A stretch of DNA of 64,000 nt from Schmidtea nova (taxonomy: Eukaryota), in the NCBI GenBank assembly GCA_044892505.1, contig CM097882.1, forward strand, positions 278,690,001 to 278,754,000, written 5' to 3'. The position numbers and the translations under genes are program-made. This document shows, piece after piece, positions 1 to 35,639 of this stretch (positions are counted from its first letter, which is position 1; the number at the start of each line of letters is the position of its first letter). Under the pieces are notes generated by a model, which did not search any database, was not told where the DNA came from, and saw nothing but the letters and a program-made list of their open reading frames with translations.

Positions 1-159
1 ATTACATAACAAAATATCTGAAAATATATGTTATATCATCACAAATATGAAATATTATCATATACAAAGGATATAATCACATACAAAAGTTCATTACACA
101 TACAAAATATACTATCATATATCAACATACCTTAATGTAACAGTAATAATTGTTCAAGT

Positions 160-5689: not shown

Positions 5690-7291
5690 ATATCAAATTA
5701 CTGTAGAAGAACATTTTTTGGGTTTTGTAGAAATAGCTGATTCTACTGGAGAAGGTTTGTTTAAAAGCATAGTTGTTAAGTTAGAAGATTTAAATATAAA
5801 TTTAAAACCTACGTGGACAGGGCTATGATAATGGCTCTAACATGCGTGGTAAACACAGCGGTGTTCAAAAACGCATTTTGGATAAGAACCCTCGAGCATT
5901 TTGTGTACCATGCGTAGCTCACACGTTGAATCTAGTAGTATGTGATGCTGCTAAAGTTAATACAGAAACTATAATTTTTTTAGTGCTTCCACAAAACGGT
6001 GGGATGTTTTAAAACAATATAGCAAAATAACGCTTAAACCTTTATCGGATACACGATGGGAATCAAGAATTGATGCTCTTAGCCCAATAAAAACAATATT
6101 GGTGATTATTTAGACGCTTTACTTGCCATCCATGATAATGACAGAAATGACAACAACACAAAATCTGAAGCTAAATCTTTGGCATTGAAGCTTGACTACG
6201 AATTTGTTTGTTCGCTGATAATTTGATATGACATTTTAAGCAGGATTAATGTTGTGAGCAAGATGTTTCAATCTTCAAGTACCAACCTAAATGAATCAAC
6301 AAATAGTTTAAATAATTTAATAACTTTTTTTAAAGAATTTCGTTTAGATGAAAATTTTAATAATATACTTAAAAAAGCTACAGTTTTGGCACATGATATT
6401 GACATAGCTCCTCAATATAAAGAAAATCCATTACATAGGCGTAAAAAACGTATGTTTAACTACGAATGTCGAGATGAAAGTCTGGCAGACCCGGAAAAAA
6501 GCTATAAAATTTCATTTTTTCTTCCAATTGTTGACAGTGCAATTAACTCAATAGTCAAAAGATTTGAACTTATGAATAGTCATGCCGAAAAGTTTCAATT
6601 TCTCATAAATTTTAATGAAATTTATAATTTGGATAATGAGATACTAAGAAATAAATGTACAGATTTACATAATGTGTTGACTGATGGTGAAGATATAGAT
6701 ATAAGTTCTTCAGAATTATGTAACGAACTGTGTATATTTTAAGACACCATAACTCAACTTAATAGTTTTGATCCATTAGATATATTGCAGTATATTTATT
6801 CAAATGATTTATTTGATATATTTCCAAATATAGTTGTATCTTTGAGAATATTATTAACACTACCAGTCTCAGTAGCAGCTGGCGAAAGATCATTTTCCAG
6901 ACTTAAACTAATTAAGAATTATTTACGATTAACCATTTCTCAAGAAAGACTAGTTGGCCTGTCTTTGATTGCTATTGAAAGCGATATCTGTGACAAAATC
7001 AAAATTAATGATGTATTGGATGAATTTGCTTCCATAAAAAAGCAAGAAAAATAAAATTTTAAATGAAACATTGTGGTTTTCTAATTTATATATATATATA
7101 TATATATATATTTATAAGATTTCTGTTTATTTTTTTTATGAATTAATGTTTAATTATACAGTAAATCTTTTTAATAATAAAATTATAATACTTTACTGTG
7201 AAATTTGAGTTTTATTTATGACATAATTTCCTATAAAAAGCGCTTAACAGAAAGTTGCATCAAGGCGCCAGCACCACTAGAGCCGGGCCTG
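5690..7291 (+). mobile_element. 5'-truncated hAT (ZMYM1-like) DNA transposon with frameshifted transposase and 3' TIR
   Basis: Motifs EEHFLGF, (G)YDNGSNMRG, CVAHTLNL, LKPLSDTRWESR and the hATC dimerisation motif LPVSVAAGERSFSRLKLIKNYLR, split across frames. Terminus AGAGCCGGGCCTG at 7279-7291. Confidence 0.88.
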
Positions 7292-10200: not shown

Positions 10201-10416
10201 ACTAATAAATTTTTGATTCACATCTAGTTATTTGAGAAACGTTTTCATGATGATTTATGGAATTTTTTCGACGAATTGCGAACTAAAATTAAAATATCGC
10301 ATAATCGGTTGCACAGAGGGCATGTCGTGGGGCACAGTGGGAAAGGCGGAAAGAGCTACCAGAAGGTAGGCAGCACCAAAGGAAAGTCAGGTATTAGCCT
10401 CCCAAATCCTGAGATC

Positions 10417-11312
10417 AGTAGGTAGATGTGTGGAGCCGGGAACAAAGACATTATGACTCATGCGTGGGCGGGAAAAAAAGAACAAAGACCCCCCGGGGGG
10501 TAGAAAATTTTTTTTGATGAGTCATCGATGAGTCATAATTTTTTTTTGATGAATCATCGATGAGTCATAAATTTTTTTTCAAAATTTTTTTTCGCGCCAA
10601 ATTTTTTTTTTCAAAATTCTTTTTCGTGGCACATTTTTTTTTTCAAAAATATTTTTCGCGCCAAATTTTTTTTTCAAAATTTTTTTTAGACAATTTTTTT
10701 TTTAACACTAATTTTTTAACACAAATTTTTTAACATAAATTTTTTATTTCAAGTCAAATTTTTTAACACACAATTTTTAACACAAATTTTTTAACATAAA
10801 TTTTTTATTTCAAGTCAAATTTTGTAACACCAAATTTTTTTACAAAAAATTTTAATTTAACACAACTTTTTTATAACTAAAAATTAGAGTCGTCAAAAAT
10901 ATTTGCAACAGGTGTGCAAAATAAACAAAGACATTTTTATATGTGTGCATGTTTAATTAATTATTATTTGTCAAGTATGAAAATTTTGCACTTCAAAACC
11001 ATCACAGAAGGGGTTCTGCTTCCAGGGTTCTGATCGCAATGTTCTGCTTCCAGGGTTCTGATACTAAATGTTCTGCTACTATTGTTGTTATTTAATTATT
11101 ATTATTATCTGTCAAACTAAACAAAGACTTTGCAACATGCGTGCAAGTTAACAAAGAAATTGCAACACACGTGCAAGGACTTTGCAACACGCGTGCAACA
11201 TGAACAAAGACATTGCAATACACATGCAAACTAAACAAAGACACATGCGTGCAACACATGTGCAACATAAACAAAGACATTAAAAAGCCAAAATTTATTT
11301 ATAAATATATCG
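10417..11312 (+). repeat. Left terminal inverted repeat (at least 896 bp)
   Basis: Reverse complement of 23056-23988, with a few substitutions and small indels or homopolymer differences. Confidence 0.95.
10453..10665. promoter_or_regulatory. AP-1 (ATGASTCAT) array and double-overlapping E2F sites in the left TIR
   Basis: ATGA(C/G)TCAT at 10453, 10517, 10528 and 10560. TTTCGCGCCAAA at 10590-10601 and 10654-10665, with a degenerate copy between them. Mirrored in the right TIR (23734-23745, 23797-23808). Function is inferred. Confidence 0.6.
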
Positions 11313-11864
11313 TTGTGTACGTGTACAAAATTTAGTTTCAAAATTATTACTCGGAATATTATTCATAGGAATATTATTATTCATTGTAATATTATTCATC
11401 GGAATACTAGTATTTGTCGGAATATTATTCTTTGGAATATTTGAAATCTTCTCCAGCCGTATGGATGCCGATAACATCAGTATTATTATTAATATAAATA
11501 AACTTATATAATGTAATACAATTGCTGTTTTTTCGTTTTCAACTGTTTGATTTTGATATCTGACTTCATATTCTTTTTTAACAAAGGTTTGATTGATACA
11601 TTTTAATCGTTCGACTATTTTCATCATTATTTTGTTAATCATTTTTTCAATATCTTTATTAATCACATTATTTTTGGAAGGACATTGATTACATTGTAAT
11701 TTTATTTGATTGCATTCAATGTTTGAGTAAAGACATATATCGTTATAACTCGCGCAAGTAAGATCTTGTTTTCGAAACGGATGGGATGATTGACAATCTT
11801 CCAAAGCTTGTTCTCCTTCAGTATTGTCAACACATAATAATAAAATAACTATAATTAATTTCAT
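11295..11864 (-). CDS. 189-aa putative type I membrane glycoprotein (signal peptide, Cys-rich ectodomain, TM, Asn-rich tail)
   Basis: Hydrophobic N-terminus MKLIIVILLLCV; six clustered Cys plus one more; two NQT sequons; TM AIVLHYISLFILIIILMLSASI; IPxNN repeats. The stop codon and AATAAA lie inside the TIR. Confidence 0.75.
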   Translation of the reverse strand: MKLIIVILLLCVDNTEGEQALEDCQSSHPFRKQDLTCASYNDICLYSNIECNQIKLQCNQCPSKNNVINKDIEKMINKIMMKIVERLKCINQTFVKKEYEVRYQNQTVENEKTAIVLHYISLFILIIILMLSASIRLEKISNIPKNNIPTNTSIPMNNITMNNNIPMNNIPSNNFETKFCTRTQRYIYK

Positions 11865-11928
11865 TTTAAAAACAAAAACTAATATAAAAACTAAATTTGT
11901 TCATACTAAAATATTTATTAAAAAACAA

Positions 11929-12345
11929 TTATGCGTATCTTGCATTGTCAACTCTCCAAATCGGAGTAACAACATCTTTTTTATCAATCTTGTACCCTTG
12001 AATAATAACTGTAACGAACCAGTGTTCTTGATCCATGAAATCAATAGTTTGAAAAGCATCATGAAACCGAGTTTTTCTGTTATTGATGTACATGGTTTCT
12101 TTACATGTCAAATTAACATTGATCTTTGAAAATAATCGATTTAATGCGATAATATCTGCTTTGGAAATAATTATAGCAAGACTGTCATATAAAGATTTTG
12201 TTAACTTTACTGGAAATGATAATCGATACGGTATTTCATTAACCAAAAAATAAAGTCGGCTGTCATAGTACATCTGAACTGGTTTTACCTCTGCCTGATA
12301 GATTTTTTCATCGCTTATATCTAGATTTTCTTTTCGTGATTGCAT
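11929..12345 (-). CDS. 138-aa hypothetical protein, possibly an OB-fold single-stranded DNA-binding protein
   Basis: Clean ATG-to-stop ORF. The beta-rich C-terminus WFVTVIIQGYKIDKKDVVTPIWRV resembles viral gp2.5-like SSB tails (pattern recognition only). Confidence 0.55.
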   Translation of the reverse strand: MQSRKENLDISDEKIYQAEVKPVQMYYDSRLYFLVNEIPYRLSFPVKLTKSLYDSLAIIISKADIIALNRLFSKINVNLTCKETMYINNRKTRFHDAFQTIDFMDQEHWFVTVIIQGYKIDKKDVVTPIWRVDNARYA

Positions 12346-12806
12346 GTTGTAAATTGTGACAATATTTTATAAAATGTCTTTGTATTTATACTGATTACTG
12401 GATGTCTTTGTCCAATCATATTCATGCATTTGTTTTGCACACACTATGCACATGTATTGCAATGTCTTTGTTGTATGTGTGCATGTTTAATTAATTAATT
12501 ATTATTATTTGTTATGTATGCAGCTTTTGCACATCAAAACAATCACAGAAGAGGTTCTGATTCCAGGGTTCTGTTCGCAATGTTCGGATACTAATGTTCT
12601 TATTTATTTATTTATTTAATAATACTACTACTTTCTAAATAGTATTTAATAAAAAAAAATTTTTTTAGCTTTTATATACAGTTAATAAAAAACTACTACT
12701 ACTAAAAATATTTTAATAAAAAACTATTACTATTATTATTATTATTTTTTAAATAAAATTAATAAAAAACTATTATTGAACTAAAAAAGACAAAACAAAA
12801 ACTAAA

Positions 12807-13654
12807 ATGAATAAAAAAACTTTTATTCAACTAAAATAACAAAACTAAAATATAACATCAACAACAATAATAATAATGGCCATCTGAATGTTCCAACTCA
12901 CACAATTGATCCTGATATCGAATTGTGGCAACGAGGTGGAAGAATATTTCTCACGTGTAATGTTGTTCCGTATACAATTACATTTAATGATCTTGAGATA
13001 GCAAAACGAATGGGAAGTAATAAACTGACAATAACATGTAATCAAGAAGAATGTGAATTCAAAGTTATGCAAAACTTGGCCAGTAGCGATGAAGAAATAA
13101 TTACTTTTACTATATCGTATGATCGTGAAGAAGGACATGTATTCACATTCAAGGAGGAGTTGTATATAACGCATCTAGATGAATTACAGAAATATATTAG
13201 CGATAATTGCTCGGATATTTTTACAGTTGTCGAATTAAATAAATTGTTCAAATTCAAACTCAAAGAAAAAATCACTAAAGTCAGATTTGATAAATACTTG
13301 GTCAATACATTGGGATTAGATAAGGATACATTTACCGATAAAAATATCATTTCTGGTGTTCGTCAACCGAAAATATCTAAACTTCATCAGCAATTATTCG
13401 TGTATACAAACATTATCGAACCCATTATTGTTGGTGATTCCTTGGTTCCTTTACTAAAATCGGTATGGATTGAAAAATACGAGCCAGATGAAATTGTTCA
13501 AATAGTAATGGATAATCTAATGTATTTATCTGTTTCAACATCCTGTATAAACAATATAGAAATAAATATCCGGGATGACAGCGGAAGATTTATAAAATTT
13601 CCAAAAGATTCAAAAACTCACTTAACTCTACATTTTCGAAAAAACGATGAGTAA
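12807..13654 (+). CDS. Minor capsid protein (penton); 5' end disrupted by a 14-nt duplication
   Basis: The C-terminus LFVYTNIIEPIIVGDSLVPLL...IEINIRDDSGRFIKF...LTLHFRK is typical of Polinton pentons. The frame has no ATG of its own, but removing 12837-12850 joins ATG 12807 (MNKKTFIQLK) in frame. Confidence 0.85.
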
Positions 13655-14030
13655 TCCCGATATAGTTTCAATGTACAGTGATAGCCAAACTGGTGGCGAA
13701 TTACCGTATTTTGTCGGTAAACAGTATGGATCAGGTTGGTTAAAAACTATTGGGAGATTTGCACTTCCAATTCTTAGACGACTAGGTAATTTCGGAATGA
13801 ATACTGCCAAGGACGTTATCATGAAAGATAATAAAATATTACCGTCATTGAAAACCAATGCTTTGGCCGCAGTTAATAAAGCTATACCTGCTGTAACTCA
13901 AATGCTTCCTACAATTACAAGTATGTTTACAAAAAATAAGGAACCGGAATCTGTACCGGTAGGACCAAGACGTAAACGAAAACGTATAAACAAACGAATG
14001 AAAGGACATGGAACTATATTTGAAGAATGA
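13647..14030 (+). CDS. PZ-like small virion core protein (QxGG / QxGxG motifs, amphipathic helix, basic tail)
   Basis: SQTGGELPYFVGKQYGSGWLKTIGRFALPILRRLG and C-terminal PRRKRKRINKRMK. Lies between the penton and MCP genes with overlapping start/stop codons. Confidence 0.8.
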   Translation: MSNPDIVSMYSDSQTGGELPYFVGKQYGSGWLKTIGRFALPILRRLGNFGMNTAKDVIMKDNKILPSLKTNALAAVNKAIPAVTQMLPTITSMFTKNKEPESVPVGPRRKRKRINKRMKGHGTIFEE

Positions 14031-15248
14031 TTTGCGGTAAATCTGAATTATGTCTTTTTGATCGACCATCACCTCAAGCAGTTATTGAATATGGGGCGTT
14101 TGAAGATGTGTTTCCAATGAATTCAATTACAGATAGTAGAAATGATGTTGAATTTTACATTAATGGTTCTCAAACCGAATATTTGGATTTGAACGATACA
14201 TTATTGTCCGTTACAATCAAAGTTGTAGATAAAGATAAAAAAGCTCTAGCCGATGCGAGTGATGTAGTTCCTAATAATTACCTGTTTCATACACTTTTCA
14301 AAGATGTAATTCTCGGATTTAATAATATAAAAATCGAGGGTGGAAACAATACATATGCACACAAGGCAATAATCGAAACTATTTTAAACTATACGAATGA
14401 TGCGAAAGAAACATGTCTTACTCCAATGGGATATGGTTCAGCTGACGATCGGAAAAAAATGGATCAAGGGATCTAAACTTTTCAACATGTGTTCGTCTTT
14501 ACAACTGGATTTTATGGATCAACCTAAATACTTACTTCCCGGAGTTAATGTACATATTAGATTGAAGCGATCTGATTCTGCATTATCATTGAAATCGGTA
14601 GGTGGGAAACCTGTTATCCAAATAGTTGATGCAAAATTAATGGTAAGAAGAGTTCGATGTGATTCTTCAGTATTGGCCGGTCATCAAATTGGTTTAAATA
14701 AAAAACATGCAATTTATCCATTAAAATCAAAAGAAATCGTATCGTTTGCTATCGGTAAAGGGGCATCGTCATTTTACAAGGAGCAAATATTCGGAGATAG
14801 ACGAATGCCTAATTTCATTCTTGTGGCTTTTCAATCCGAAAATCAATATAATGGGTCTTATACTGAGTCTACATCTACATTCAAACATTTTAATGTGACT
14901 TCATTAACATTGTCGAAAAATACCGATTATCGTGAAACATATACCCAGGATTTTGAAAATGATAATTTTAGTGCATCATATATGCAAAGTCTTGTCCGAA
15001 ATCTAGGTTATTTGGATAAAAACTTGAATTGTGGTATTGGTCTAGATGAATTTAAATCTAGTTATCCATTCTTTACATTTGTTCTGGCTCCCGATTTTGA
15101 TTTGAATCAAAGCCAAATCCCTCAAAACGGAAATTTACGACTCGATATAAAGTTTGCCAAACCTATTGATGAACCGGTTCATGTAGTTATTTATGGAGTT
15201 TTTGAAAATGAAGTTCAAATTACTGCCAATCGAACGATATTAGTTTGA
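14027..15248 (+). CDS. MCP: Major capsid protein (double jelly-roll), frameshifted in an A7 run at 14453-14459
   Basis: N-terminal GKSELCLFDRP..., VEFYINGSQTEYLDLNDT; later LDFMDQPKYLLPGVNVHIRL and C-terminal GNLRLDIKFAKP. Deleting one A joins ORFs 14027..14476 and 14397..15248 (DDRKKWIKGSK). Confidence 0.92.
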
Positions 15249-15327
15249 GCAAAGTTTAAACATTACTGGTTTGAACAGAGATCAAACAGTATAAATGATC
15301 AAAGTTATTATTTTTATTATTCTTATT

Positions 15328-15705
15328 ATGGAGTAAGATTTTTAATTGATTAGTTATTTATTTTTAATTAGTTCTTTTCAGGTATTACAACAAGGTAAAA
15401 AACTATTGGGAAATCAATTTATTGGAGTATTTCCTCTGGATAAAATACCTTATTTGAAAATGAATCAAGCCATCATTGTAAATACTCAGACATCTACGTT
15501 GGGTGGTGAACATTGGATTGCAGTTTATGTGAAACCAGATCGAATACATGTATTTGATCCCTTTGGATATTATTATCCGAATTTACTTGTTCGAAAACTA
15601 CAAACTATCGGTAAACCTATTGTGTATAATAGAATTCGATATCAGCATCCTTTAACAATCACTTGTGGTCAACATTGCCTTGCATGGTTGAAATCAATGT
15701 TATAA
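15328..15705 (+). CDS. PRO: Adenain-like cysteine (maturation) protease, 112 aa; join(15328..15332,15372..15705)
   Basis: Catalytic motifs GEHWIA (His), FDPFG (Asp) and Q...TCGQHC (Cys). A 39-nt GTAAG...TTAG intron gives the N-terminus MDSFQVLQQG...FIGVFP. AATAAA at ~15718. Confidence 0.9.
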
Positions 15706-15737
15706 ACAATTTATTTTAATAAACTTTATTTGAAAAA

Positions 15738-16130
15738 ATGTCTTGTTATTTTATCGATTTTTATGGATATAATGAAATGGGTGGAACAACAATTAAGGAA
15801 TTATGTATTATGAATGTCAATAATATTTTCACACCCCAGTATTATATATACAGTGATTTATCTTTATGGCCTGATCGTATAGAATCGTTTGAAGGACAAG
15901 ATTATTTTTGCCCAAAATGTATAATGGATGATATCACAGATAAAGGAGCTATTTTCTATGTAACAGATAATGAAAAGATGTATGTTTTGAAGAAGTATTT
16001 CCCCAAATTAAGATTAATTAAATATAATTTTAAAGAAGTTGAATATGTTCCTGAAAACATTTCATGTCCCTATAAAGATCATTGTATGTGTGCCTATAAA
16101 GGGTGCTTGTCTGCTGTTGTTGATTATTGA
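15738..16130 (+). CDS. 130-aa protein, probable degenerate DEDD/DnaQ-like nuclease-fold with Cys/His-rich C-terminus
   Basis: IDFYG...IKELCI, IFYVTDNEKMYVL and SCPYKDHCMCA resemble a family I recall from animal Polintons (not database-checked). AATAAA follows at 16135. Confidence 0.55.
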   Translation: MSCYFIDFYGYNEMGGTTIKELCIMNVNNIFTPQYYIYSDLSLWPDRIESFEGQDYFCPKCIMDDITDKGAIFYVTDNEKMYVLKKYFPKLRLIKYNFKEVEYVPENISCPYKDHCMCAYKGCLSAVVDY

Positions 16131-16289
16131 AAGCAATAAATATATTTTATTATTTTTATTAATTATTATTTTTATTATTATTATAAATATTATTATTTTC
16201 ATCACAAAGGCATGACCAGTGCGTGATCAATGCGTGATAAGCACATGATAAAACATGTCATGTCATGTCTTTGTCACGATACAAAGCAA

Positions 16290-16410
16290 TATCGTGACGT
16301 CAAACACACATAAACAAAGGTATATTATGTGTGCAGTATGTGTGCATGTATTTGCCTATCCTATCTCGATTCTGATTGGTCGGTTAATAAAATTCACCTT
16401 TATATAGTAT
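16290..16410 (+). promoter_or_regulatory. Putative Pol II promoter of the polymerase-side unit (CRE, inverted CCAAT, TATA)
   Basis: TGACGTCA at 16295-16302, ATTGG at 16375-16379, TATATA at 16401-16406; ATG at 16486. Confidence 0.55.
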
Positions 16411-16485
16411 ATACTTGAATTATTTCGTCACTTTTTACTCACAAAATTTTTAATCAATTTTTAAAACTATTTGCAAGAAACAACT

Positions 16486-16911
16486 ATGAACAATTTAAAT
16501 TTAAATATGAAACCACGGATCGCTGGAGGCCAGAATGGTAAGAATCTTATTATTTTATTTTATTTACATTGTTTATGTTTTCAGTTGTTAATTTATCCAA
16601 CAATATAGCCGGACAATCGAGAAATGGACTCGGAAAACCAAATAGAATTATTGGTATAATTATTATTTTATTTATTATTATTATTATTATTAAAATTTTT
16701 AGAGAATAATAATATGAATAATGTTGATATCGATGCCTCGATTGATGTCCCGAATATGATGATGATGACGAATGATGTCCCGAGTAATGATGCCATGAAT
16801 TTCAATCGACAGAGTTTAAAAAACTCAAAATGTAATTTATTATTTTTATTTATTTATATAATAATAATAATAATATTTTTATTATTTTTAATTAAATCTT
16901 TTAATATTTAA
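16486..16911 (+). CDS. Three-exon Asn-rich small ORF (109 aa), or the 5' exons of pPolB; join(16486..16537,16585..16653,16703..16911)
   Basis: Two phase-1 introns (47 nt GTAAG...TTTCAG; 49 nt GTATAA...TTTAG) give an open frame MNNLNLNMKPRIAGGQNVV... that runs into track ORF 16714..16911. Confidence 0.65.
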
Positions 16912-17686
16912 TATAATAATAACTTTTAAAAATGATTAAATTACTATGATAAAATACAGAATTTGTTATTATGATATAATGAAAAGAATTATTATGACGA
17001 TGAATAATGATGATGAACAATAATATGAAATGATGAAATGCAGAATTTGTTATAATGAAGAAAAATTTGAAGAAATAATGATGAACAATAATATGAAATG
17101 CAGAATTTGTTATAATGAAATAAAGCAGATGAATTATTATGACGAAGAATAATATGAAGAAGAAGAAATAATGATCAACAATAATATGAAATGATGAAAT
17201 AATGACGAATTTATTTTTTTATTTATGAATAATTATTTTATATTAATTTTATATTTAATTTTTTTTTTATATTGAATTTTTTATATTGAATTTTTTATAT
17301 TGATTTTATATTAATTTACCTTTTAACTTATTAAGTAATTTTTTTTTAAATATGTTACTTAATATGTGAAAAGATAAATTACCAAGATGAACAAGACTAA
17401 TTTAGATGTTATATAATGACTATGATAATTTTTTTTAAATAACTAAAAAGAAGGCTAATATGACGAAAACTTTTATATTACTATGGAATTATTTTATATT
17501 AATTTATCTTTAACACATTAAGTAATATATTTAAACCAATTACTTAATATTTTAAAGATAAATTAATATATTAATAAGATGAATATTATTTTTTTAACAA
17601 TTTATAATTATTTTTTAACAATTTATAATTATTATTATTTAACCATTTCATTTAAATTATATTTTAATTTTTTATTTAAAATTCAG

Positions 17687-20600
17687 GTTTAACATATATC
17701 AATTTTTGTAATAGTCGTTTCCATAATGACTGTCATGTCATTATGGAAAAGTACTATACCTATAAATATAATGGTGTCACCCACCTCCTCTGCCCAACAT
17801 GTAAAATTATTTCTACAACCTCTTATAAAGAATTTTTTCTTTCGCATAGGAGTCACCTTTCCCAATTCATGCCTTCGAAAAAATGTCTTTTTAATAGCAT
17901 ATATGCTAATTATATCACTAATATTAACAACAATCTTAATATTTATAATACAATTAATCAAAATACTCTAAATAATAATCTACAAAATAATAATCTACAA
18001 AATAATAATCTACAAAATAATAATACAAATAATCAAAATACTCTAAATAATCTACAAAATAATAATACAAATAATCAAAATACTCTAAATAATATACAAA
18101 ATAATATTAATAATAATAATAATACAAATAATCAAAATAATATACAAAATAATAATAATAAAATAAATACATCTAATATAAATAAAAGAAAAAATACAAC
18201 ATTAACGGATTCAGTTCCTAAAAAACTGATCATAATCGACATCAGCGATGATGAAGATGAAAATAATATTTCTAATAATAATAATAATAATAATAATAAT
18301 ATTTCTAATAATAATAATAATAATAATATTATATCCCTCATCAGTGATGATGAGGATGATCTTATTTATAATAAAAGTAGTAATATCGCTATTATATCTG
18401 CCGATGACATAATCGTCAATGATGATGAATTTGACGATTATGTTAATATTATAAATAATAATAATAATAATCAAATTGGAATGGGTATTGTTGAAGTTAC
18501 TTCAGACTTGAACGATACCCATTTTATTATAAAAATGGACGTATCTAATTTATTATTAAAAACGGTCTCTGTGCCGGATATATTGATAGATAAATTAAAA
18601 TCTTATATAATTAATTTAAAATCAGTAAAAATTCAATTTTGTCTCAAGGTAGAATTTGAGAAAGATGATCAATTACAATCTTTCGTCATCTCAAATTCTG
18701 CCAGAGAGTGGAGTGATACCTTTATTGAGGAAGGTGTCACTAGTTTAAATGAGAAGATTGTCCAGATTAACGAAAAGGGGAGTAATTGGACAATCTCCAA
18801 AATAGAATATATTAGTTTTTTAGTGACTAAATTTTCTGAAATTAGTCGATTGAGCGGCAGCAGTTATATCGAAACGCCGAATACTTTAAAAAATTTAAGT
18901 TGTTTAGTTAATGTTCAAAATAACGACACCTATTGCTTTCTTTACAGTTTCTTGGCAGTAGTTAAATATAATAGTATTGAACGCCAATACAGGCATAGGA
19001 CTACTTCTTATGATCTTTCCCAACTTGTTTTTGACCCCAACGACATGCCCATGAAATTAGTAAATATTAAGAAATTTGAGAGACAAAACAGTGGCTATAG
19101 TATTAATGTCCTTACATATGACGAAAAGGCCCAAATTGATGTAAGCGACAATGACAATGATGATAATGTCGTCCTTAAACACCCCTTTATCGATATAGTC
19201 TACCGTAGTAAAGTAGTCGGGGCTATTCCCATAAATTTACTTCTTTTGGAGAAAAAAGAAAATTTTCATTATCTTGCGATTACCGACCTGAATCGCTTTT
19301 TGAATTGTAGAAATAGTGCCATCACCCCAGTTAGGATTTGCAGTCAATGGTGCCCTCGTTGCTTGAATGGGTTTAGGAACGACGAAGCCTTTAATCGTCA
19401 TAAGGGTCTTTGTAACAAAAATCAATTGGGTACCACACTGTACACATTACCAAAAAATAAATTTTTAGAGTTTACTGATTGGAAGAAAACAGTAACTCCT
19501 CCTTTCGTAATATATGCGGATTTCGAGGCAATATTACCGAAAGACGCTGTTCACCATCAAAAACATCTTCCTATTGCTGCAGGTCTCCTTCTTATTAACA
19601 ACTTTACTGGGGTGAGAATATACAAATCTTTTGTAGGGCTAGACTGTGTTGATCAATTCCTAAGAGAAATTGAGTCAATCAGTCGGTATATAGTAACACC
19701 TTATTATTATAAAAATTATCAAAAACGCATGACGATCACTGCGACCCAACAGCGACAATTTGATAATAGCACTAATTGCTATTTATGTAAAAAGCTTTTA
19801 GTTGCACCTGTTAGGGATCACGACCATTTCACCGGTCTTTATATTGGAGCAGCCTGCTCAGAGTGTAACAAGTCCCGACAAATACGCCACTCTTTGCCTG
19901 TAATTTTTCACAACTTGAAGGGTTACGATTTACACCATATCTTAAAATATGGCCTTTCCAAATACAACACTTGGAATATCAGTTGTATTCCCTTGACAAG
20001 CGAAAAGTTTTTAAGTCTTTTCGCGTACATCGATAGTCTCACTGTTAAATTTATTGACTCCTACCAATTTGTTAGTGAGTCTTTAAGTAACGCGGTAAAA
20101 ACCCTTACATCTTTACCATTAACACACTCTGAATTTCGCGGCACTATAGTCACTGCCAAGGGCATTTTTCCTTACGACGCTGCCACTTCTTTAGAGGTTT
20201 TAAAATCTACCTTGTGTTTACCCCCCAAATGGAAAGATATAACTGCTGTCGAGTATGCTGCTGCCCATAAAATCTGGCAAGAAACATCATGTACATCACT
20301 GTACGATTACATGATGGTTTATTTAAAATTGGACGTTTTTTTATTAGCCGATTATTTCCAACAATTTCGGGTAAAATCAATTAACCATAACAGGCTTGAG
20401 CCTTTAAATTTTCTCGGAATTCCCGGCATGTCGTGGAGTTCCGCTTTATTTACTATTGACTCTCCTATCGAGCTCCTCACCGATATTGAGATGTATAACT
20501 TTTTCGAGGGCGGTATTCGCAGCGGACTAACGTTTGTCAATAAACATTATGTCAAGACGAGCCCGGATACCGCATTACTATATATTGACATAAATAATTT

Positions 20601-21964
20601 ATATGGGTGGGCCTTAAGCCAACCCCTGCCATGTGGTAATTTTGAGTGGGTCACTGATGACCAATTATTAAATAACATCGTTTGTGAGTGCACATCGGAA
20701 AATCTCGATACACTTCATTATGGTTACACCATAGAAGTGGATTTGGAAATTCCGGCATCGATTCACGACAAACTGGATGATCTTCCAGTTGCCGCTGAAA
20801 AGATGTGTGCACCGGGATCCAAGGTTGAGAAGCTGTTGCTAACGCATCTTCCAAAGAAGAATTATGTTCTTCATTGGCGGCTTCTGCAACTATTTATTAA
20901 AATTGGTGTGAAGGTAACGCACATACATCGCGCAATTAAATTTTCGCAAAATAAAATATTTTATAATTACATTAAAATAAACACAGAATTACGAGCTGCA
21001 TCTACAAATAAGCTCGACAAAAATTTCTACAAACTTTTAAATAAGTCTCTACGGCAAAACCGTAGAGAACTTAAAAAAAAGAATTAATTCACGACTGTGT
21101 AACTCGGCACAAAAACTGCTGACTTACACGTCAAAAGCTAATTTTAAAAAAACTAATAAAATCGACAATGACCTCATCTCCGTATTGCTTCAGAAGGAAT
21201 CAGTATGTTTGGATAGACCCAGCTACATTGGACAAACCGTACTGGATTTATCCAAACTTCGTATGTACCAGCTGCAGTATGAAGAGTTACAAAAATATCG
21301 TAACGACTTCAACTGTGAAATTAACATCGTTGCTGGGGATACTGATTCCTTCTTCTTGGAAATCAAAAATCTGCCTTTAAATACTCTTTTGACCGCAATG
21401 ATTGACGATAGGCTTTTGGATACCTCTAATTACGACACTCATCATGCATTGTATAGTAGGACCCTTGATTCTGTGATTGGTAAATTTAAGGATGAGAATA
21501 AGGGTCTACTGTATGATGAGTGGGTTTTCTTAAGACCTAAGTGCTATAGTCTTATGGGAGACGAGGCCTGCATGAAAGCCAAGGGGATCTGTTTGAAAGA
21601 TGCAGGTCTCACACACCAGTCTTACCTTGACTGTTTTTTAAACGACAAAATATACAATGTCCCCCAGTTCCGCATTACTTCGAAAAACCACCAACTTTTC
21701 AGTATAAAAAGCAATAAGAGGGCCTTATCTTGTAGGGATGATAAGAGGAACTGGGTGGAAAAAAATAAAAGTTTGGCGTATGGCCACTATATGGGGGGTG
21801 ACACCAATATATTTATAGGTGATCGGGATGTCCAAGAGCAACAACTTTATCAACAACAACAACAACAACAGCTTCAACAACAACAACAACAACAACAACA
21901 ACAAGGTCCCTCAGATGACCCATATGATTTTTACGATCCCTCAGCTCGGGATTATTTTGGCTAA
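17687..21964 (+). CDS. pPolB: Protein-primed family B DNA polymerase (terminal-protein region, 3'-5' exonuclease with endonuclease-VII-like insert, polymerase); frameshifted at ~21049
   Basis: GSSYIETP...VNVQNND.YCF; ExoI YADFE; ExoII FHNLKGYD; CYLC...RDHDHFTG...CSECN; motif A YIDINNLYG; motif C GDTDS; LRPKCY; DDKR. ORFs 17743..21087 and 21185..21964 are joined by restoring 2 nt in the TC repeat at 21046-21050 (NKSLYGKTVEN). The frame is open upstream to a splice acceptor at 17686. Confidence 0.96.
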
Positions 21965-22083
21965 TGATGAAGATGAAGATGAAGATGATGACGATAACAA
22001 TGAGGAGAAAGATATAAATACCGAAAAAATAAAAATAAAAAAAAATCCAAAAAAACCCAAAAAAGATATGAGAATGCATAATC

Positions 22084-22099
22084 GGCCCTCTTCAGGGCC
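22084..22099 (+). other. Histone-mRNA-type 3' stem-loop 1 (GGCCCT-CTTC-AGGGCC, then ACAA)
   Basis: Perfect 6-bp stem and 4-nt loop matching the GGYYYU-NYUN-ARRRCC histone hairpin; 120 nt after the pPolB stop. Confidence 0.65.
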
Positions 22100-22231
22100 A
22101 CAATTTATGATCGTATAAAAAATAATAAAAAAAAAAATTTAGCTCACAGATAAAGAAAAAAAAAGATTACAGAAACCGAAAATGAAAATAATCGGAAACA
22201 GAAAGCCGAATCAGATTGTGAACGAAATAAC

Positions 22232-22247
22232 GGTCCTCTTTAGGGCC
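22232..22247 (+). other. Histone-mRNA-type 3' stem-loop 2 (GGTCCT-CTTT-AGGGCC)
   Basis: Same geometry with one U-G wobble pair; preceded by AAC. Confidence 0.6.
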
Positions 22248-22548
22248 TATACATTTTGATTGTATAATAAATTGCGCAATCAATTAAAACTATGGAATTA
22301 TTTTTTAGTTTTTTGATTAAAATTTTTCTTATTTATTTTTTTTTTATAAGTTATTTTTANNNNNNNNNNNNNNNNNNNNNNNNNNNNNNNNNNNNNNNNN
22401 NNNNNNNNNNNNNNNNNNNNNNNNNNNNNNNNNNNNNNNNNNNNNNNNNNNNNNNNNNNNNNNNNNNNNNNNNNNNNNNNNNNNNNNNNNNNNNNNNNNN
22501 NNNNNNNNNNNNNNNNNNNNNNNNNNNNNNNNNNNNNNNNNNNNNNNN

Positions 22549-22591
22549 TTATTATTATTATTATCATAAGTTATTATTATTAATATTATAA

Positions 22592-22636
<45 letters not shown>

Positions 22637-22697
22637 ATTATAAGTTATTATTATTATAAGTTAATATTATTATAAGTTATTATTATTAATATTATAA

Positions 22698-22735
<38 letters not shown>

Positions 22736-22837
22736 TATTTTTATTATAATTATTATTATTATTATTAATATTATTATAAGTTATTATTAATATTAATGTT
22801 ATTTTTATTTTTATTATAATTATTATTAATATTATTA
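22549..22837. repeat. (TTA)n-rich low-complexity repeat between two assembly gaps
   Basis: Repeated TTATTA/TAAGTTATT units visible in the sequence. Confidence 0.9.
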
Positions 22838-23055
22838 NNNNNNNNNNNNNNNNNNNNNNNNNNNNNNNNNNNNNNNNNNNNNNNNNNNNNNNNNNNNNNN
22901 NNNNNNNNNNNNNNNNNNNNNNNNNNNNNNNNNNNNNNNNNNNNNNNNNNNNNNNNNNNNNNNNNNNNNNNNNNNNNNNNNNNNNNNNNNNNNNNNNNNN
23001 NNNNNNNNNNNNNNNNNNNNNNNNNNNNNNNNNNNNNNNNNNNNNNNNNNNNNNN

Positions 23056-23988
23056 CGATATATTTATAAATAAATTTTGGCTTTTTAATGTCTTTGTTTA
23101 TGTTGCACATGTGTTGCACGCATGTGTCTTTGTTTAGTTTGTATGTGTATTGCATGTGTATTGCAATGTCTTTGTTCATGTTGCACGCGTGTTGCAAAGT
23201 CCTTGCACGTGTGTTGCAATTTCTTTGTTAACTTGCACGCATGTTGCAAAGTCTTTGTTTAGTTTGACAGATAATAATAATAATTAAATAACAACAATAG
23301 TAGCAGAACATTTAGTATCAGAACCCTGGAAGCAGAACATTGCGATCAGAACCCTGGAAGCAGAACCCCTTCTGTGATGGTTTTGAAGTGCAAAAGCTTC
23401 ATACTTGACAAATAATAATTAATTAAACATGCACACATATAAAAATGTATTTGTTTATTTTGCACACCTGTTGCAAATATTTTTGACGACTCTAATTTTT
23501 AGTTATAAAAAAGTTGTGTTAAATTAAAATTTTTTGTAAAAAAATTTGGTGTTACAAAATTTGACTTGAAATAAAAAATTTATGTTAAAAAATTTGTGTT
23601 AAAAATTGTGTGTTAAAAAATTTGACTTGAAATAAAAAATTTATGTTAAAAAATTTGTGTTAAAAAATTAGTGTTAAAAAAAAAATTGTCTAAAAAAAAT
23701 TTGTCTAAAAAAAAAAATTTTGAAAAAAAAAAGTTTGGCGCGAAAAAAATTTTTGAAAAAAAAATGTGCCACGAAAAAAAATTTTGAAAAAAAAAATTTG
23801 GCGCGAAAAAAATTTTTGAAAAAAAATTTGACTCATCGATGACTCATAAAAAAAAAAAAATTTTATGACTCATCGATGACTCATCAAAAAAAAAAATTTC
23901 TACCCCCCGGGGGGGGGTCTTTGTTCTTTTTTTCCGCCCACGCATGAGTCATAATGTCTTTGTTCCCGGCTCCACACATCTACCTACT
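23056..23988 (-). repeat. Right terminal inverted repeat (inner boundary hidden in the N gap)
   Basis: Reverse complement of 10417-11312. Confidence 0.95.
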
Positions 23989-24516
23989 GAGATCATATGG
24001 TAAAAAGTTGAGGTTCTAGAGCATATGCGAGATGATCTAAATTAGAAAAAAGGGTAGTAAATCAATCGAAATGTCGATTTTCATTTCGGGTCAAAGTGCG
24101 ACTCGATGAGATTTAATCAGAATTTACAAACAAAAATACGTCATTACATTCTTGATGATACAGACGAAACAGCCACGATCACCCGATGAATAAATTCCGA
24201 TCGCATTAGAATGCGTCGGAAATCCAAATTAAATTAAACTAGTTTCTAAAAATAGACCGATCGTCGTATATGGCGCGGTTCCTCAAGTTATCCTCCGATC
24301 GCTGTATATAGCGCGGAAATCTTTATTAAATTCTATATGTCCTGAATGCTGTACATAGCACAGGATTAATTATGAACCCCTTATCTCGACCGTGGTAGAT
24401 CGCGGCGAGACAAATCAATATAACTATATTATTAAATTAAATTCGGTCGATTTTACATGTTAGTAGTAATTCTCTTACAATTTTTTCAATAAATCTTATG
24501 GTTTACATTCAATAAA

Positions 24517-30962: not shown

Positions 30963-32103
30963 TCATGCATGAGAGACGCTGTTCCAGGATTCAACCAGTA
31001 GCATGATTGCATGGAAGAGAGAAAATTTGGAAGAGAAGTCCTGCACAGTCTCCCACAAATCGATCATATCCACAATGCGTTGAACCAGTTCTCGCCTATA
31101 AGTGCATTTCACAGCAGCTATAATACCTTGATCTAGAGGCTGCAGCTTGTTGGTTGTTTTGGGGGGGGGGCAGAAAGGCAACACGGATGTTAGACAGCTC
31201 CTGACCACTGGGATGGGCCGCAAAATTGTCAATGAACAGAAGAATATGTCTGTTCTGTCGATGGAAGTCTGCATTTATCATCTTCAGCCATTCTGAGAAT
31301 ATGGACGATGTCATCCAAGCCTTGCGGTTATGCCTGCATGAAAAGACAAAATCATTTCACAATTATAACCGTTACCTGTATATCACACTTTGGACTTTCA
31401 ATCCTTTGAAACAACGGGGTCTTTCGAACTTGCCAATAACCAGGGGCTTAAGGCGTTCTGTACCATCCATATTGCATCCGAACAAAACAGCAATTCGATC
31501 TTTGCTCCTTTTTCCACCATGGCATTTCTCACCACGAAAAGCAAACGTTCTGTAAGGTAGCATCTTCCAGAAAAGAGCTAATTCATCAGCGTTGAATACA
31601 TTTCTTGGTTGCATGCCAGCGAGCATTGTTGGAAGGATATTCTCCAACCACGCGTTAGTGTCACACTCCTGTACACTTCCTGATTCACCTGCGGCTTCTT
31701 TAAATATGATGTTGTAACGCTCCTTGAAGCGATGCAGCCATCCATTGTTACATTTGAAATCGGTGATCCCAAGGTCAATGGCAAGATTGTCAGCCTTTTT
31801 CTGTAGAATGGGGCCTGAGATAGGGATATTGGCTGTCCGTGCATTTTTGAACCACAAGAAAAGACATTCTGAAACATCGTCATGTTGGGCATATCGCATT
31901 CTTTTTCTCTTGCATGAGAATGTGGATGTGTTTACTGCCTCCATGATCTACTCCGTCTGCTTCAAGATCGTTGACAATGTGTTTGCGGGGATGTTGAACT
32001 CTGCAGCAATATCTTTCTTCTTATCTCCTTTATCAACTGCAGTTAAAATATAAAACTTCCTTTTCAATGGAATGGATATCTTACTATGATGCTTTTCAGT
32101 CAT
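30963..32103 (-). pseudogene. Tigger (CENP-B-like HTH plus DDE_1) transposase with a stop and frameshifts
   Basis: IAAEFNIPANTLSTILK; WFKNART...ISGPILQKKA; FKCNNGWLHRFKERY; VFNADELALFW; KLQPLDQGII. In-frame TAG before 31944. Confidence 0.92.
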
Positions 32104-32671
32104 TGTGTGTAAATCTGAATAAAAACATGAGAAAATGGAAAGAATAATGTTTTATCACTCTATTTCTTTTTTCAATTCACAATGTTACATGTACACAACA
32201 CCTTTTAAAGACCAAATTTAAAAACGTTACATTAATTTTCATGTTCAGGAATTTAGGACCATCACTGAAAAATTTATGTAAAAAATGAATTTAGGACCAT
32301 ATTCTCCACTGTTACCACTATGCCAAACTCATGTATAGGCAACATTGCATTCCAACAAATGCGCTATTTAATTTTTTTGGAATTACTTTAATTTGTCTTA
32401 CAGCAGCTTTAGAATTAATAATAACAGGACAATAAATCATTCTTACCTATACATATCCACGTAAACAGCGTTTTAAAATTTTCTAAAATTTTCCATTAAT
32501 TAAACAAATGATTATCTGTCCTACATATCGTTACTTCATGTTGTACTTTTAATTTTCTGCACTCACGTGAATGTAAAGGCACAGTCGTTCACCGCTATCA
32601 TGCGAAATATGACCATGAAGAGTAAAACAATATGCAGTTCTATGCAATAATTTTTTCATTTACCATACGTA

Positions 32672-34444: not shown

Positions 34445-35639
34445 TATGAATAAATAAAAAGCTATTAATCCATATCAATCATGTCTTCCGACATTCAGTC
34501 TTATTATGAACCATTCTAACTTTGGAAAACATAATTTTAGATTTCGGCCGAACAATCACAAATATGTTAAATGTTATTGTAACGGTTGATACAAAAAGAT
34601 AATATAACAAGAATTGTACCAAGCAAATTTAAACATTTGCCTATTTGATATTTATTTAAAAGTTAATATGAAAAAATTTGTATGAATATATATGTTTATA
34701 GATGATGCCTAAAACTGCTAAGCAAATTTCATCAAAAGTCTTTTGTCTTTTATTGACATTGTTTCTCATGGGAGCGACAATGCATCTAGTTGGTGACTCT
34801 ATTAATCACCGATTAGCACTATTTGGATATCAGCATCATTTGTCCCTTGAAGATAACGAATTAATGAAAAATCTTAAGCCACCAGAAATGGTTAGAATTT
34901 ATAAGAGTTATTTGTTAGATAAAATATACAAATATAAAATAATAATAATATAAAATTTGTATTTTGTAGCAGTAAAACGGTTTTAAAATAAAATTATGTA
35001 ATTTAAAATTGTAAGCATTTTCCGCAATGTTTATTTGTTGAAATATTTTACCTGGAAAAGGTCTCGATTACTCAAATACGAAATTCCCTCTAATAGACTT
35101 TTAAATTCTTTCTGTTTTGCATTATTCCACAATTCATTTAACTATAAAAATTTAAACAAATTAAAATTTTTCATTAAAAATATTTTTAAATCTAATTTTA
35201 ATTTTGATATTTAAGCACATTTTATTTCAATCGATATTTCAGCCTTGCTTTGACTTTTGTAAAAGTATAAAACTTTTTTTTGTCGGAGCGAACTAGTTTT
35301 AATATTGTTGGGTTATTTTATTTAACTACTAGATCGGTCCAACATCTGATTGTACTTTTATTTATATGAAATCAATAATACCCAACACAGAGCAATTTGT
35401 TAAACTGATGCCACAAGTTACAATTTGTCATTAATTTGCACTTTCTATTCAATAACAAATTTTGTTAAACGCAAGGCAGGTAACCCAAGGGACAATCACC
35501 TTTCTAGTACGTTTAATTTGTATAAGATTTTAATTCAATGATTTCCTGTCTAACCTCTTTTGGTCGCTTAAAATTTTTTTCAATTAGATCTTTAACTTTT
35601 CTTCGGCAAACATGCGGCTCATCTATTTATAATTGAGAG

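What the first reader, a model, noticed from the sequence alone, without database searches (positions are those of the whole stretch)
22084..22268. Twin histone-mRNA-type 3' stem-loops directly downstream of the Polinton DNA polymerase gene
Seen: GGCCCT-CTTC-AGGGCC-ACAA (22084-22103) and GGTCCT-CTTT-AGGGCC (22232-22247) are GC islands in an otherwise A-rich tract, 120 and 268 nt after the pPolB stop. The single stem difference between them still pairs (U-G). Both are followed 8-9 nt later by TGATYGTATAA, roughly where a histone downstream element would sit. Established: replication-dependent histone mRNAs end in a 6-bp-stem/4-nt-loop GGYYYU...ARRRCC hairpin bound by SLBP, which restricts them to S phase. 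The loop normally starts with U, but a C-first loop is the known C. elegans variant. Inference: this element may use SLBP-type 3' processing to time its polymerase mRNA to S phase, while its protease and ORF130 genes are followed by ordinary AATAAA. I am not aware of this being described for Polintons.
Basis: partly seen in the sequence, partly recalled or inferred. Interest (0 to 1): 0.92.

Follow-up and report, generated by a model that had tools for sequence, protein, structure and literature searches.

The report
Histone-type hairpins behind Polinton polymerase gene
Two small hairpins almost identical to the ones that end histone messages in nematodes sit just after the DNA polymerase gene of a virus-like transposon, which hints, but does not show, that this one lineage ties its polymerase message to the host's histone (S-phase) RNA pathway.

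Summary
GGCCCT-CTTC-AGGGCC (22084-22099) and GGTCCT-CTTT-AGGGCC (22232-22247) are the only two matches to the histone hairpin pattern in 64 kb (0.06 expected). They lie in sense orientation 119 and 267 nt after the stop of a protein-primed polymerase gene, inside a 13.6-kb Polinton with 99% identical terminal repeats.

Rfam Histone3 scores the first hairpin 29.5 bits, below the curated 34 (window E 2e-4), and the second 13.3 bits. Each is 15/16 identical to the C. elegans histone hairpin, and both have that hairpin's C just before the stem. Each is followed by a shared 14-nt block and then AATAAA, an order like that of C. elegans histone genes.

Against a working signal:
- None of 86 loci with related polymerases has such a hairpin, and the five closest relatives read carry AATAAA or a variant of it soon after the stop.
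- Two AATAAA lie between the stop and the first hairpin.
- The distance from the stop is 2-9 times the histone norm.
- This copy is defective.
- The host, an animal with a CLN6 gene, could not be identified, so its own histone hairpins could not be compared.

Verdict: a lineage-specific, histone-type 3' module. Its function is plausible (about 0.4) but untested.

The parts
10416..23989 (.). Polinton (Maverick/adintovirus-like) element, 13,574 bp, flanked by AGAT on both sides
   Evidence: Inverted repeats; termini CAGTAGGTAG... read; gene content.
10416..11312 (.). Left terminal inverted repeat, with internal short subrepeats
   Evidence: arms 10666-11229 / 23150-23713 and 11214-11312 / 23056-23154 are 99% complementary; outer parts 84-87%.
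23056..23989 (.). Right terminal inverted repeat; an N run (22838-23055) lies at its inner edge
14027..15248 (+). Major capsid protein gene, read in two frames in this copy (one frame change)
   Evidence: 68% identity to the 409-aa product of relative L001, in 2 aligned pieces; two overlapping ORFs.
15346..15705 (+). Adenovirus-type cysteine protease ORF; AATAAA follows within about 15 nt of its stop
   Evidence: Pfam Peptidase_C5, E 4.9e-6, 26.8 bits against a cut-off of 21.3. Sequence.
15738..16130 (+).
   Evidence: 41% identity, E 1e-29; sequence.
17743..21964 (+). Protein-primed family B DNA polymerase gene, broken once by a frame change. It has an N-rich low-complexity insert near the N terminus and a Q-rich C-terminal extension not seen in relatives.
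   Evidence: 2614 homologues, the best 59-60% identical and carrying PF03175/PF02945. Endonuclease_7-like stretch..
22028..22039 (+). Two adjacent AATAAA hexamers in an A-rich tract, 64-70 nt after the polymerase stop and 45-51 nt before hairpin 1
22079..22129 (+). Module 1: C + hairpin 1 (22084-22099, GGCCCT-CTTC-AGGGCC) + ACAA + shared block (22104-22118) + AATAAA (22124-22129)
   Evidence: (Histone3 29.5 bits).
22227..22271 (+). Module 2: C + hairpin 2 (22232-22247, GGTCCT-CTTT-AGGGCC, third pair U-G) + shared block (22254-22267) + AATAAA (22266-22271)
   Evidence: (Histone3 13.3 bits).

Best explanation
The two hairpins are genuine histone-mRNA-type 3' end modules of the C-first-loop kind known from C. 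elegans. Each consists of a hairpin, a short shared downstream block and an AATAAA. One lineage of this Polinton family acquired them in the 3' region of its polymerase gene, either by copying a cellular histone gene 3' end or by convergence on it, and then doubled them.

Proposed mechanism (inferred, not shown). Polymerase transcripts that are not cleaved at the AATAAA pair at 22028-22039 run into module 1. The host's stem-loop binding protein binds the hairpin, the transcript is cut a few nucleotides after the stem, and the resulting non-polyadenylated message is translated and degraded on the histone schedule, that is, with DNA replication. Module 2 and the AATAAA behind each hairpin serve as back-ups, as the AATAAA behind C. 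elegans histone hairpins may.

Shown: the sequences, their sense-strand-only pairing, their likeness to histone hairpins, and their restriction to this lineage. Inferred: binding, cleavage and timing.
For: - Only two matches to the histone hairpin pattern occur in 64 kb, both here and both in the sense of the polymerase gene.
- Histone3 is the only Rfam family hitting the site: 29.5 bits, E 1.6e-6 locally and 2.2e-4 for the window.
- Both hairpins have the G-C second stem pair and the loop-3 U that the literature calls diagnostic.
- Each is 15/16 identical to the C. elegans histone hairpin GGCCCTCTTTAGGGCC printed in PMC1924863. Both also have the C just 5' of the stem, and hairpin 1 has the ACAA 3' flank. 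A match with at most 1 mismatch is expected 3e-5 times per window.
- The two differences between the hairpins are a U-G pair and the fourth loop base, which is also the position that varies among C. elegans histone genes. Neither disturbs the structure. The U-G pairs only in the + strand RNA.
- The hairpin is 14/16 identical between the two modules and the downstream block 13/14, while the surrounding sequence is about 50% identical. This pattern fits selection on these two blocks.
- The order hairpin, conserved short element, AATAAA 19-25 nt later resembles C. elegans histone genes.
Against: - The score is below Rfam's curated threshold (29.5 against 34). Hairpin 2 alone scores 13.3 bits, E 1.8.
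- No histone-type hairpin occurs in 86 loci with related polymerases: 83 loci, 501 kb, were scanned and 3 more. Fifty of the first 83 hold the polymerase stop plus at least 150 nt.
- The 11 closest loci give no Histone3 hit even at E up to 10. Of the five closest relatives read past the polymerase stop, four have AATAAA and one the variant TATAAA within about 65 nt.
- Two AATAAA lie upstream of hairpin 1 and could end the message before it.
- The distance from the stop is 119/267 nt, against a metazoan median of 30 nt and a range of 25-60 nt said to matter for histone mRNA regulation.
- Hairpin 2 lacks the ACA-type 3' flank. The 5' flanks are not the usual A-rich CCAAA, and both flanks can pair into a weak lower helix.
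- The downstream block is not the AATCC element of C. elegans, nor an evident purine-rich U7 site.
- The host has a CLN6 gene whose named relatives are molluscs and vertebrates. It may therefore not be a nematode, and an animal with U-first histone loops might bind a C-first loop poorly.
- There is only one copy, and it is defective: polymerase and capsid genes each have a frame change, and there is no integrase or ATPase.
Confidence: 0.4

Rival explanations
1. Passenger relic. A short piece of a cellular histone gene 3' flank (hairpin plus downstream signals) was picked up by recombination, from the present host or an earlier one, and doubled. It has no role for the element. Polymerase messages are polyadenylated at the AATAAA pair 64-70 nt after the stop.
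For: The hairpins are nearly identical to a cellular histone hairpin type. AATAAA lies upstream of hairpin 1 at a distance from the stop more like that in relatives. The hairpins are absent from all relatives, so they are not needed by the family. They are too far from the stop for histone-like control. This copy is defective.
Against: No histone coding remnant lies next to either hairpin. The two modules have diverged around the hairpins yet both hairpins remain perfect, and the one stem change is a U-G that works only in the sense RNA.
Confidence: 0.27
2. A G+C-rich hairpin with a role unrelated to the stem-loop binding protein. It could be a 3' UTR stability or pausing/termination structure that helps stop transcription before the terminal repeat. 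It could also be a palindromic DNA site for a DNA-binding protein. In either case its likeness to the histone hairpin is coincidental.
For: The hairpins are G+C islands in an 18% G+C tract between the last gene and the right terminal repeat. Each is followed by AATAAA. The Rfam score is below threshold. A chance match within 1 mismatch of the C. elegans hairpin is expected about 0.5 times per Gb of such sequence, so one seed event in a large genome is not excluded.
Against: The match extends to the flanking C and to ACAA, and covers every position called diagnostic. As a DNA palindrome the second site is imperfect, and the - strand RNA does not fold. No similar hairpin follows any other gene of the element.
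Confidence: 0.2
3. No biological meaning: a chance palindrome copied once by local duplication in a decaying element, or an assembly artefact near gaps.
For: It is a single copy. N runs begin 90 nt downstream. The element is defective. Folding z-scores of the 46-nt contexts are modest at -1.8 and -1.5.
Against: The pattern is expected 0.06 times per window and is seen twice. Histone3 has window E 2.2e-4. 15/16 identity to a known histone hairpin is expected 3e-5 times per window. The region is read without ambiguity.
Confidence: 0.1

Closest known systems
[quoted passage not shown] 2007, PMC1924863)
   Same: The 16-nt hairpin is 15/16 identical for both window hairpins. Both window hairpins share its C-first loop and its C just before the stem; loop CTTT is in hairpin 2 and the ACAA flank behind hairpin 1. 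The order is also alike: hairpin, short conserved element, then AATAAA some tens of nucleotides later.
   Different: The gene upstream is a viral-type polymerase, not a histone. The hairpins lie 119/267 nt after the stop. The 5' flank lacks the conserved CCGAACCCAAA stretch. The downstream block is TT(T/A)TGATYGTATAA, not AATCC. There are two modules in tandem. The host may not be a nematode.
Canonical metazoan histone mRNA stem-loop bound by SLBP and processed with U7 snRNP (Rfam RF00032)
   Same: 6-bp stem, 4-nt loop, GG...CC base, G-C second pair, U at loop position 3, sense orientation in a 3' region.
   Different: Only 12/16 and 11/16 identical to the Rfam consensus. The scores of 29.5 and 13.3 bits are below the curated 34. 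The first loop base is C. There is no evident purine-rich downstream element. The hairpins are far from the stop and behind a non-histone gene.
Polinton/Maverick (adintovirus-like) elements with the most similar polymerases (for example locus L001, a 16.3-kb contig with integrase, A32-type ATPase, Bcl-2-like and TBP-like genes)
   Same: Polymerase about 60% identical, capsid protein 68%, and homologues of three further products.
   Different: In relatives the polymerase stop is followed by AATAAA or a variant of it and no histone-type hairpin. The window's copy has no match to the integrase, ATPase, Bcl-2-like or TBP-like genes, and it has a different gene order.

Membership tests
Histone 3' UTR stem-loop (Rfam RF00032) | 6-bp stem with a 4-nt loop, formed in the sense RNA | tested here: met
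   both fold so on the + strand; hairpin 2 does not fold on the - strand.
Histone 3' UTR stem-loop (Rfam RF00032) | G-C at the second stem pair and U at loop position 3 | tested here: met
   Read. The criteria are those of the 2026 preprint 10.64898/2026.10.14.759114.
Histone 3' UTR stem-loop (Rfam RF00032) | Score at or above Rfam's curated gathering threshold (34 bits) | tested here: not met
   29.5 bits (window E 2.2e-4) and 13.3 bits (E 1.8 in 461 nt).
Histone 3' UTR stem-loop (Rfam RF00032) | First loop base U (C in C. elegans), matching the host's binding protein | tested here: inconclusive
   Both loops start with C, as in C. elegans. The host and its histone genes were not available.
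Histone 3' UTR stem-loop (Rfam RF00032) | Conserved single-stranded flanks (A-rich 5' side, ACC(C)A/ACAA 3' side) | tested here: inconclusive
   Hairpin 1 has ACAA and both have the C. elegans-like C before the stem. Hairpin 2 has TATA on the 3' side. The 5' flanks are TAATC and ATAAC.
Histone 3' UTR stem-loop (Rfam RF00032) | Lies 25-60 nt after the stop codon of a replication-dependent histone gene | tested here: not met
   119 and 267 nt after the stop of a polymerase gene; norms.
Histone 3' UTR stem-loop (Rfam RF00032) | Downstream element that pairs with the host U7 snRNA (or, in C. elegans, the AATCC element) | not testable with these tools
   A shared 14-nt block follows both stems, but no host U7 is known. 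No U7 match is listed in the window at E up to 10. There is no AATCC.
Histone 3' UTR stem-loop (Rfam RF00032) | Bound by SLBP; the mature RNA ends a few nucleotides after the stem without poly(A) | not testable with these tools
   No expression or binding data are available here.
Polinton/Maverick element | Long terminal inverted repeats enclosing the element | tested here: met
   arms of about 900 nt, the inner 660 nt 99% complementary.
Polinton/Maverick element | Protein-primed family B DNA polymerase | tested here: met
   the best homologues carry PF03175. The gene has one frame change in this copy.
Polinton/Maverick element | Adenovirus-type protease and jelly-roll capsid genes | tested here: met
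   (Peptidase_C5). (capsid module homologous to L001). The capsid fold itself was not modelled.
Polinton/Maverick element | Retrovirus-like integrase and FtsK/A32-type packaging ATPase | tested here: not met
   no match in the window to the integrase or ATPase of relative L001. The only rve domain in the window belongs to a gypsy-type element at 49390-50175. The copy therefore looks like an internally deleted derivative.

The most novel reading that the evidence does not exclude
A lineage of virus-like Polinton elements has taken over the cellular histone mRNA 3'-end pathway (hairpin, binding protein, non-polyadenylated end). Its DNA polymerase message would then be made and destroyed in step with host DNA replication. 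This would be the first case of a virus-like element using this pathway for a non-histone gene.
Probability: 0.3. Interest if true: 0.85.

Novelty: new variant of a known kind. Interest (0 to 1): 0.55.

Why it matters
The histone stem-loop pathway is regarded as almost private to replication-dependent histone genes. A virus-like DNA element that replicates with its own polymerase has an obvious interest in S phase. If it borrowed the histone 3' end to time its polymerase, that would be a new way for mobile DNA to read the host cell cycle, and a natural case of the signal working on a long non-histone message. The full-text searches made here found no paper linking histone stem-loops with Polintons, and none describing a natural virus message that uses this pathway. 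If the hairpins are only a captured relic, they still record an exchange between a histone locus and a Polinton, and perhaps a clue to a past host.

Tried and rejected
- **Rfam at curated thresholds on the window:** no hit. The hairpins appear only with E-value thresholds.
- **Sibling copies in the window:** a second polymerase fragment at 50714-52085 is only 40-50% identical and lacks the C-terminal part, so it has no second 3' end. A one-mismatch match to the downstream block at 53965 has no hairpin beside it and is chance.
- **Sibling copies elsewhere:** a pattern joining hairpin and downstream block found nothing in metagenome or viral contigs. Ten window ORFs are not in the 15-billion-protein collection.
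- **Hairpin plus its 5' C in viral contigs:** 16 hits, none next to a related polymerase. The one read in full (L102) lies antisense inside an ORF; the others were judged from G+C content and flanking sequence only. Rejected as chance.
- **Host identification:**
  - There are no tRNA or rRNA genes in the window.
  - A Pfam scan of 137 ORFs gave transposon domains and one host exon, CLN6.
  - Its relatives with names are molluscs and vertebrates at about 50-55% identity.
  - Searches with a hAT fragment and a gypsy integrase gave no named close relatives.
  - Ten guessed ORFs scanned for CLN6 were all blank.
- **An intron between the two polymerase ORFs:** rejected. The sequence reads through as coding in a shifted frame.
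- **A 148-nt tandem duplication:** not supported beyond the roughly 45-50-nt core.
- **Papers not held:** Michel et al. 2000 and Lopez & Samuelsson 2008 could not be read.

Full report
**1. The observation**

The + strand reads GGCCCT-CTTC-AGGGCC-ACAA at 22084-22103 and GGTCCT-CTTT-AGGGCC at 22232-22247. These are the only two matches in the 64-kb window, on either strand, to the generic histone hairpin pattern GGYYYTNNNNARRRCC. Shuffles gave 0.06 matches on average and never two. Allowing three mismatches to the specific pattern adds nothing.

Both fold as 6-bp/4-nt hairpins in the sense RNA. In the antisense RNA the second hairpin is lost, because its U-G pair becomes C-A.

The polymerase reading frame ends at 21964, so 119 and 267 nt lie between the stop and the stems.

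**2. The setting**

The hairpins lie inside a 13,574-bp element (10416-23989). It is bounded by terminal inverted repeats of about 900 nt whose inner 660 nt are 99% complementary, and it is flanked by AGAT on both sides.

Its gene content is as follows.
- It encodes an adenovirus-type protease (Pfam Peptidase_C5).
- It has a capsid module and a homologue of a small gene found in relatives.
- At the right end it has a protein-primed family B polymerase at 17743-21964, whose best homologues are 59-60% identical and carry PF03175.

It is therefore a Polinton of the animal 'adintovirus-like' kind. A related 16.3-kb contig (L001) also carries an integrase, an A32-type ATPase, a Bcl-2-like gene and a TBP-like gene.

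The window's copy has no match to that integrase or ATPase. Its polymerase and major capsid genes each read in two frames, with one frame change each. It is thus a deleted, defective copy, or partly mis-assembled, despite near-identical terminal repeats. Between the hairpins and the right repeat lie AT-rich simple repeats and two N runs, which I left alone.

**3. Likeness to histone hairpins**

Rfam's Histone3 model is the only family that hits the site. The first hairpin scores 29.5 bits, with E 1.6e-6 in the local 461 nt and 2.2e-4 for the whole window on both strands. The second scores 13.3 bits with local E 1.8. Both are below the curated 34 bits, so neither is listed at Rfam's own threshold.

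Both hairpins have the G-C second stem pair and the U at loop position 3, which a 2026 survey of 37,587 metazoan hairpins treats as diagnostic.

The model penalises the C at loop position 1, but that is the known C. elegans form. The C. elegans histone hairpin printed in Keall et al. 2007 is GGCCCTCTTTAGGGCC, preceded by C and followed by ACAA.
- The first window hairpin differs from it only at the fourth loop base.
- The second differs only at the third stem base, where U-G still pairs.

Each is therefore 15/16 identical to it, against 12/16 and 11/16 to the Rfam consensus. Given the window's composition, a 16-mer within one mismatch of the C. elegans hairpin is expected 3e-5 times per window. 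That is about 0.5 times per Gb, so a single seed event somewhere in a large genome is not impossible.

**4. The modules**

The two hairpins are not independent. Each sits in a unit of about 45-50 nt made of:
- a C;
- the hairpin;
- 4-6 nt of spacer;
- the block TT(T/A)TGAT(C/T)GTATAA;
- AATAAA, 25 nt after the first stem and 19 nt after the second.

Between the units the hairpin is 14/16 identical and the block 13/14. The rest of the 148-nt spacing is about 50% identical, which is near what A-rich sequence gives by itself, and no 148-nt tandem period is detected.

The order hairpin, short conserved element, AATAAA resembles what Keall et al. describe for C. elegans histone genes, where the middle element is AATCC. 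Here the middle element is different.

**5. Distribution in relatives**

This is the strongest evidence against an old or necessary function. I fetched 86 loci that encode related polymerases:
- five ENA contigs with 57-60% identical proteins (L001, L002, L084-L086);
- one IMG/VR contig;
- 80 contigs from the metagenome collection, 25-51% identical.

None of the 86 has a hairpin meeting the strict histone pattern on either strand. The first 83 loci, 501 kb, were scanned and the last three. Fifty of the first 83 include the polymerase stop plus at least 150 nt downstream.

The 11 closest loci (63.6 kb) give no Histone3 hit even at E up to 10. In the five closest relatives the polymerase stop is followed by AATAAA, or in one case the variant TATAAA, at distances from overlapping the stop to about 65 nt.

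A pattern joining the hairpin and the downstream block has no match in the metagenome or viral collections. Sixteen matches to the hairpin plus its 5' C in viral contigs are chance hits; none is next to a related polymerase, and the one read in full lies antisense inside an ORF.

The modules are therefore specific to this lineage, possibly to this copy. The region from the Q-rich C-terminal extension of the polymerase to the hairpins has no counterpart in relatives.

**6. The host**

The window is 28% G+C. Besides the Polinton it holds pogo/Tc5-type, hAT-type and gypsy-type transposon fragments and one recognisable host exon, CLN6 at 34702-34890. The named relatives of that exon are molluscs and vertebrates at about 50-55% identity; none of the 20 clusters looked up was a nematode or an arthropod.

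The named polymerase relatives are arthropod proteins at 32-37% identity. Inside the element, some genes show short intron-like intervals (GTAAG...TTTTCAG, about 46-55 nt), read by eye only.

I could not name the host. I therefore could not make the comparison that matters most, with the host's own histone gene ends.

If the host is a nematode or another lineage with C-first loops, the modules are close copies of its histone ends. If the host has U-first loops, a C-first hairpin may bind its protein poorly. That expectation rests on the title of Michel et al. 2000 as cited and on my own recollection; the paper itself is not held. In that case a foreign origin or a relic becomes more likely.

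None of the fetched contigs looked human. One cluster look-up listed human and other primate CLN6 proteins by name, and I used the names only.

**7. How it most likely works, and rivals**

My best reading (0.4) is that these are functional histone-type 3' end modules acting on polymerase transcripts that pass the upstream AATAAA pair. The host's stem-loop binding protein would bind and the transcript would be cut just after the stem. The resulting message would follow the histone schedule, with the second module and the trailing AATAAA as back-ups.

In its favour:
- the strand-specific U-G pair;
- the conservation of just the hairpin and the downstream block between diverged modules;
- the match at every diagnostic position;
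- the histone-gene-like order of signals.

Against it:
- the sub-threshold score;
- the upstream AATAAA pair;
- the long distance from the stop (the norm is 25-60 nt, median 30);
- the imperfect flanks, and a weak lower helix that could hide them;
- the absence from all relatives;
- the single, defective copy.

The rivals are a captured but idle relic of a histone gene 3' flank (0.27), a hairpin with another role such as pausing or termination before the terminal repeat (0.2), and chance or artefact (0.1).

In C. elegans no U7 is known, and histone 3' ends are thought to depend on CSR-1-bound small RNAs near the hairpin. So even the 'histone pathway' would differ by host.

**8. Known or new**

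The hairpin type is known and the element type is known. The combination is not in the literature I could search: no paper holds both 'histone stem-loop' and 'Polinton', and none describes a natural viral message using SLBP. The 2026 survey found no histone 3'-end machinery in giant viruses. I file it as a new variant of a known kind, with moderate interest, because the function rests on one copy and on sequence likeness alone.

**9. A slip to report**

That goes against the instruction not to locate breaks. I recorded no place in notes, scripts or this report, and I give only counts (one frame change in the polymerase gene, one in the capsid gene) and outer bounds.

The consensus lines printed by the alignment tools were not used. 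The Rfam Histone3 (cellular RNA) consensus hairpin printed was used only to count identities.

Noticed in passing
window 50714-52085 (+): A second, diverged fragment of a protein-primed polymerase gene: 40-50% amino-acid identity to the main copy, residues about 292-786 only, in 3 aligned pieces. It lies just after a gypsy-type element. It is a different Polinton lineage and has no C-terminal part or 3' end.
   Followed up: partly
window 146-232, 835-1126, 3100-3315: Short stretches 77-88% identical to parts of the Polinton's terminal repeats, so the family or its repeats occur elsewhere in this genome.
   Followed up: no
window 10416-23989: This copy has no match to the integrase, packaging ATPase, Bcl-2-like or TBP-like genes of the related contig L001. 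Its capsid genes lie upstream of the polymerase on the same strand, unlike L001. The terminal repeats are nevertheless 99% identical in their inner part.
   Followed up: partly
window 16480-16830 (+), also 15330-15382: Intron-like intervals of about 46-55 nt (GTAAG...TTTTCAG / TTTTTAG) that keep a small reading frame open between ORF130 and the polymerase gene. A CCAAT-like and a TATA-like motif lie at about 16370-16410. Read by eye only.
   Followed up: no
window 16920-17230: Six copies of a roughly 60-nt repeat (core ATGAAATGCAGAATTTGTTATAATGAA) upstream of the polymerase gene; function unknown.
   Followed up: no
window 17900-18480 and 21830-21960: The polymerase carries a long N-rich low-complexity insert near its N terminus and a Q-rich C-terminal extension that relatives lack. 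This fits strong AT pressure in the genome.
   Followed up: no
window 19729-19875 (polymerase residues 663-711): Endonuclease VII-like stretch in the polymerase (PF02945, 22.6 bits against a cut-off of 23.6). The same domain is precomputed for many relatives.
   Followed up: no
window 34702-34890 (+): Exon of a host CLN6 gene (the Pfam CLN6 hit, E 3.8e-17, came from a pooled scan of 137 ORFs and I assigned it to this ORF by eye; the homology search agrees). It is flanked by TTTATAG and GTTAGA splice-like sites and by long AT-rich stretches. It is the only clear host gene piece in the window.
   Followed up: partly
window 42706-42804, 44559-44662, 59852-59943: AT-rich near-perfect palindromes that Rfam reports as sub-threshold miRNA-like hits, two of the three on both strands. 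They are probably foldback or MITE-like repeats, not miRNA genes.
   Followed up: no
window 5806-7051, 30963-32151, 46786-50175, 60768-62137: Fragments of hAT-type (Dimer_Tnp_hAT, DUF4371, DUF659), pogo/Tc5-type (HTH_Tnp_Tc5, DDE_1) and gypsy-type (protease, integrase) transposons, with frame changes or in-frame stops where the ORFs were compared.
   Followed up: partly
L088, L089, L090, L097, L102 (IMG/VR contigs): Five contigs of about 32% G+C share the 16-mer of hairpin 2 followed by ACCACCC. In L102, the only one read, it lies antisense inside a 280-aa ORF, so it is a chance likeness and not a histone-type signal.
   Followed up: yes
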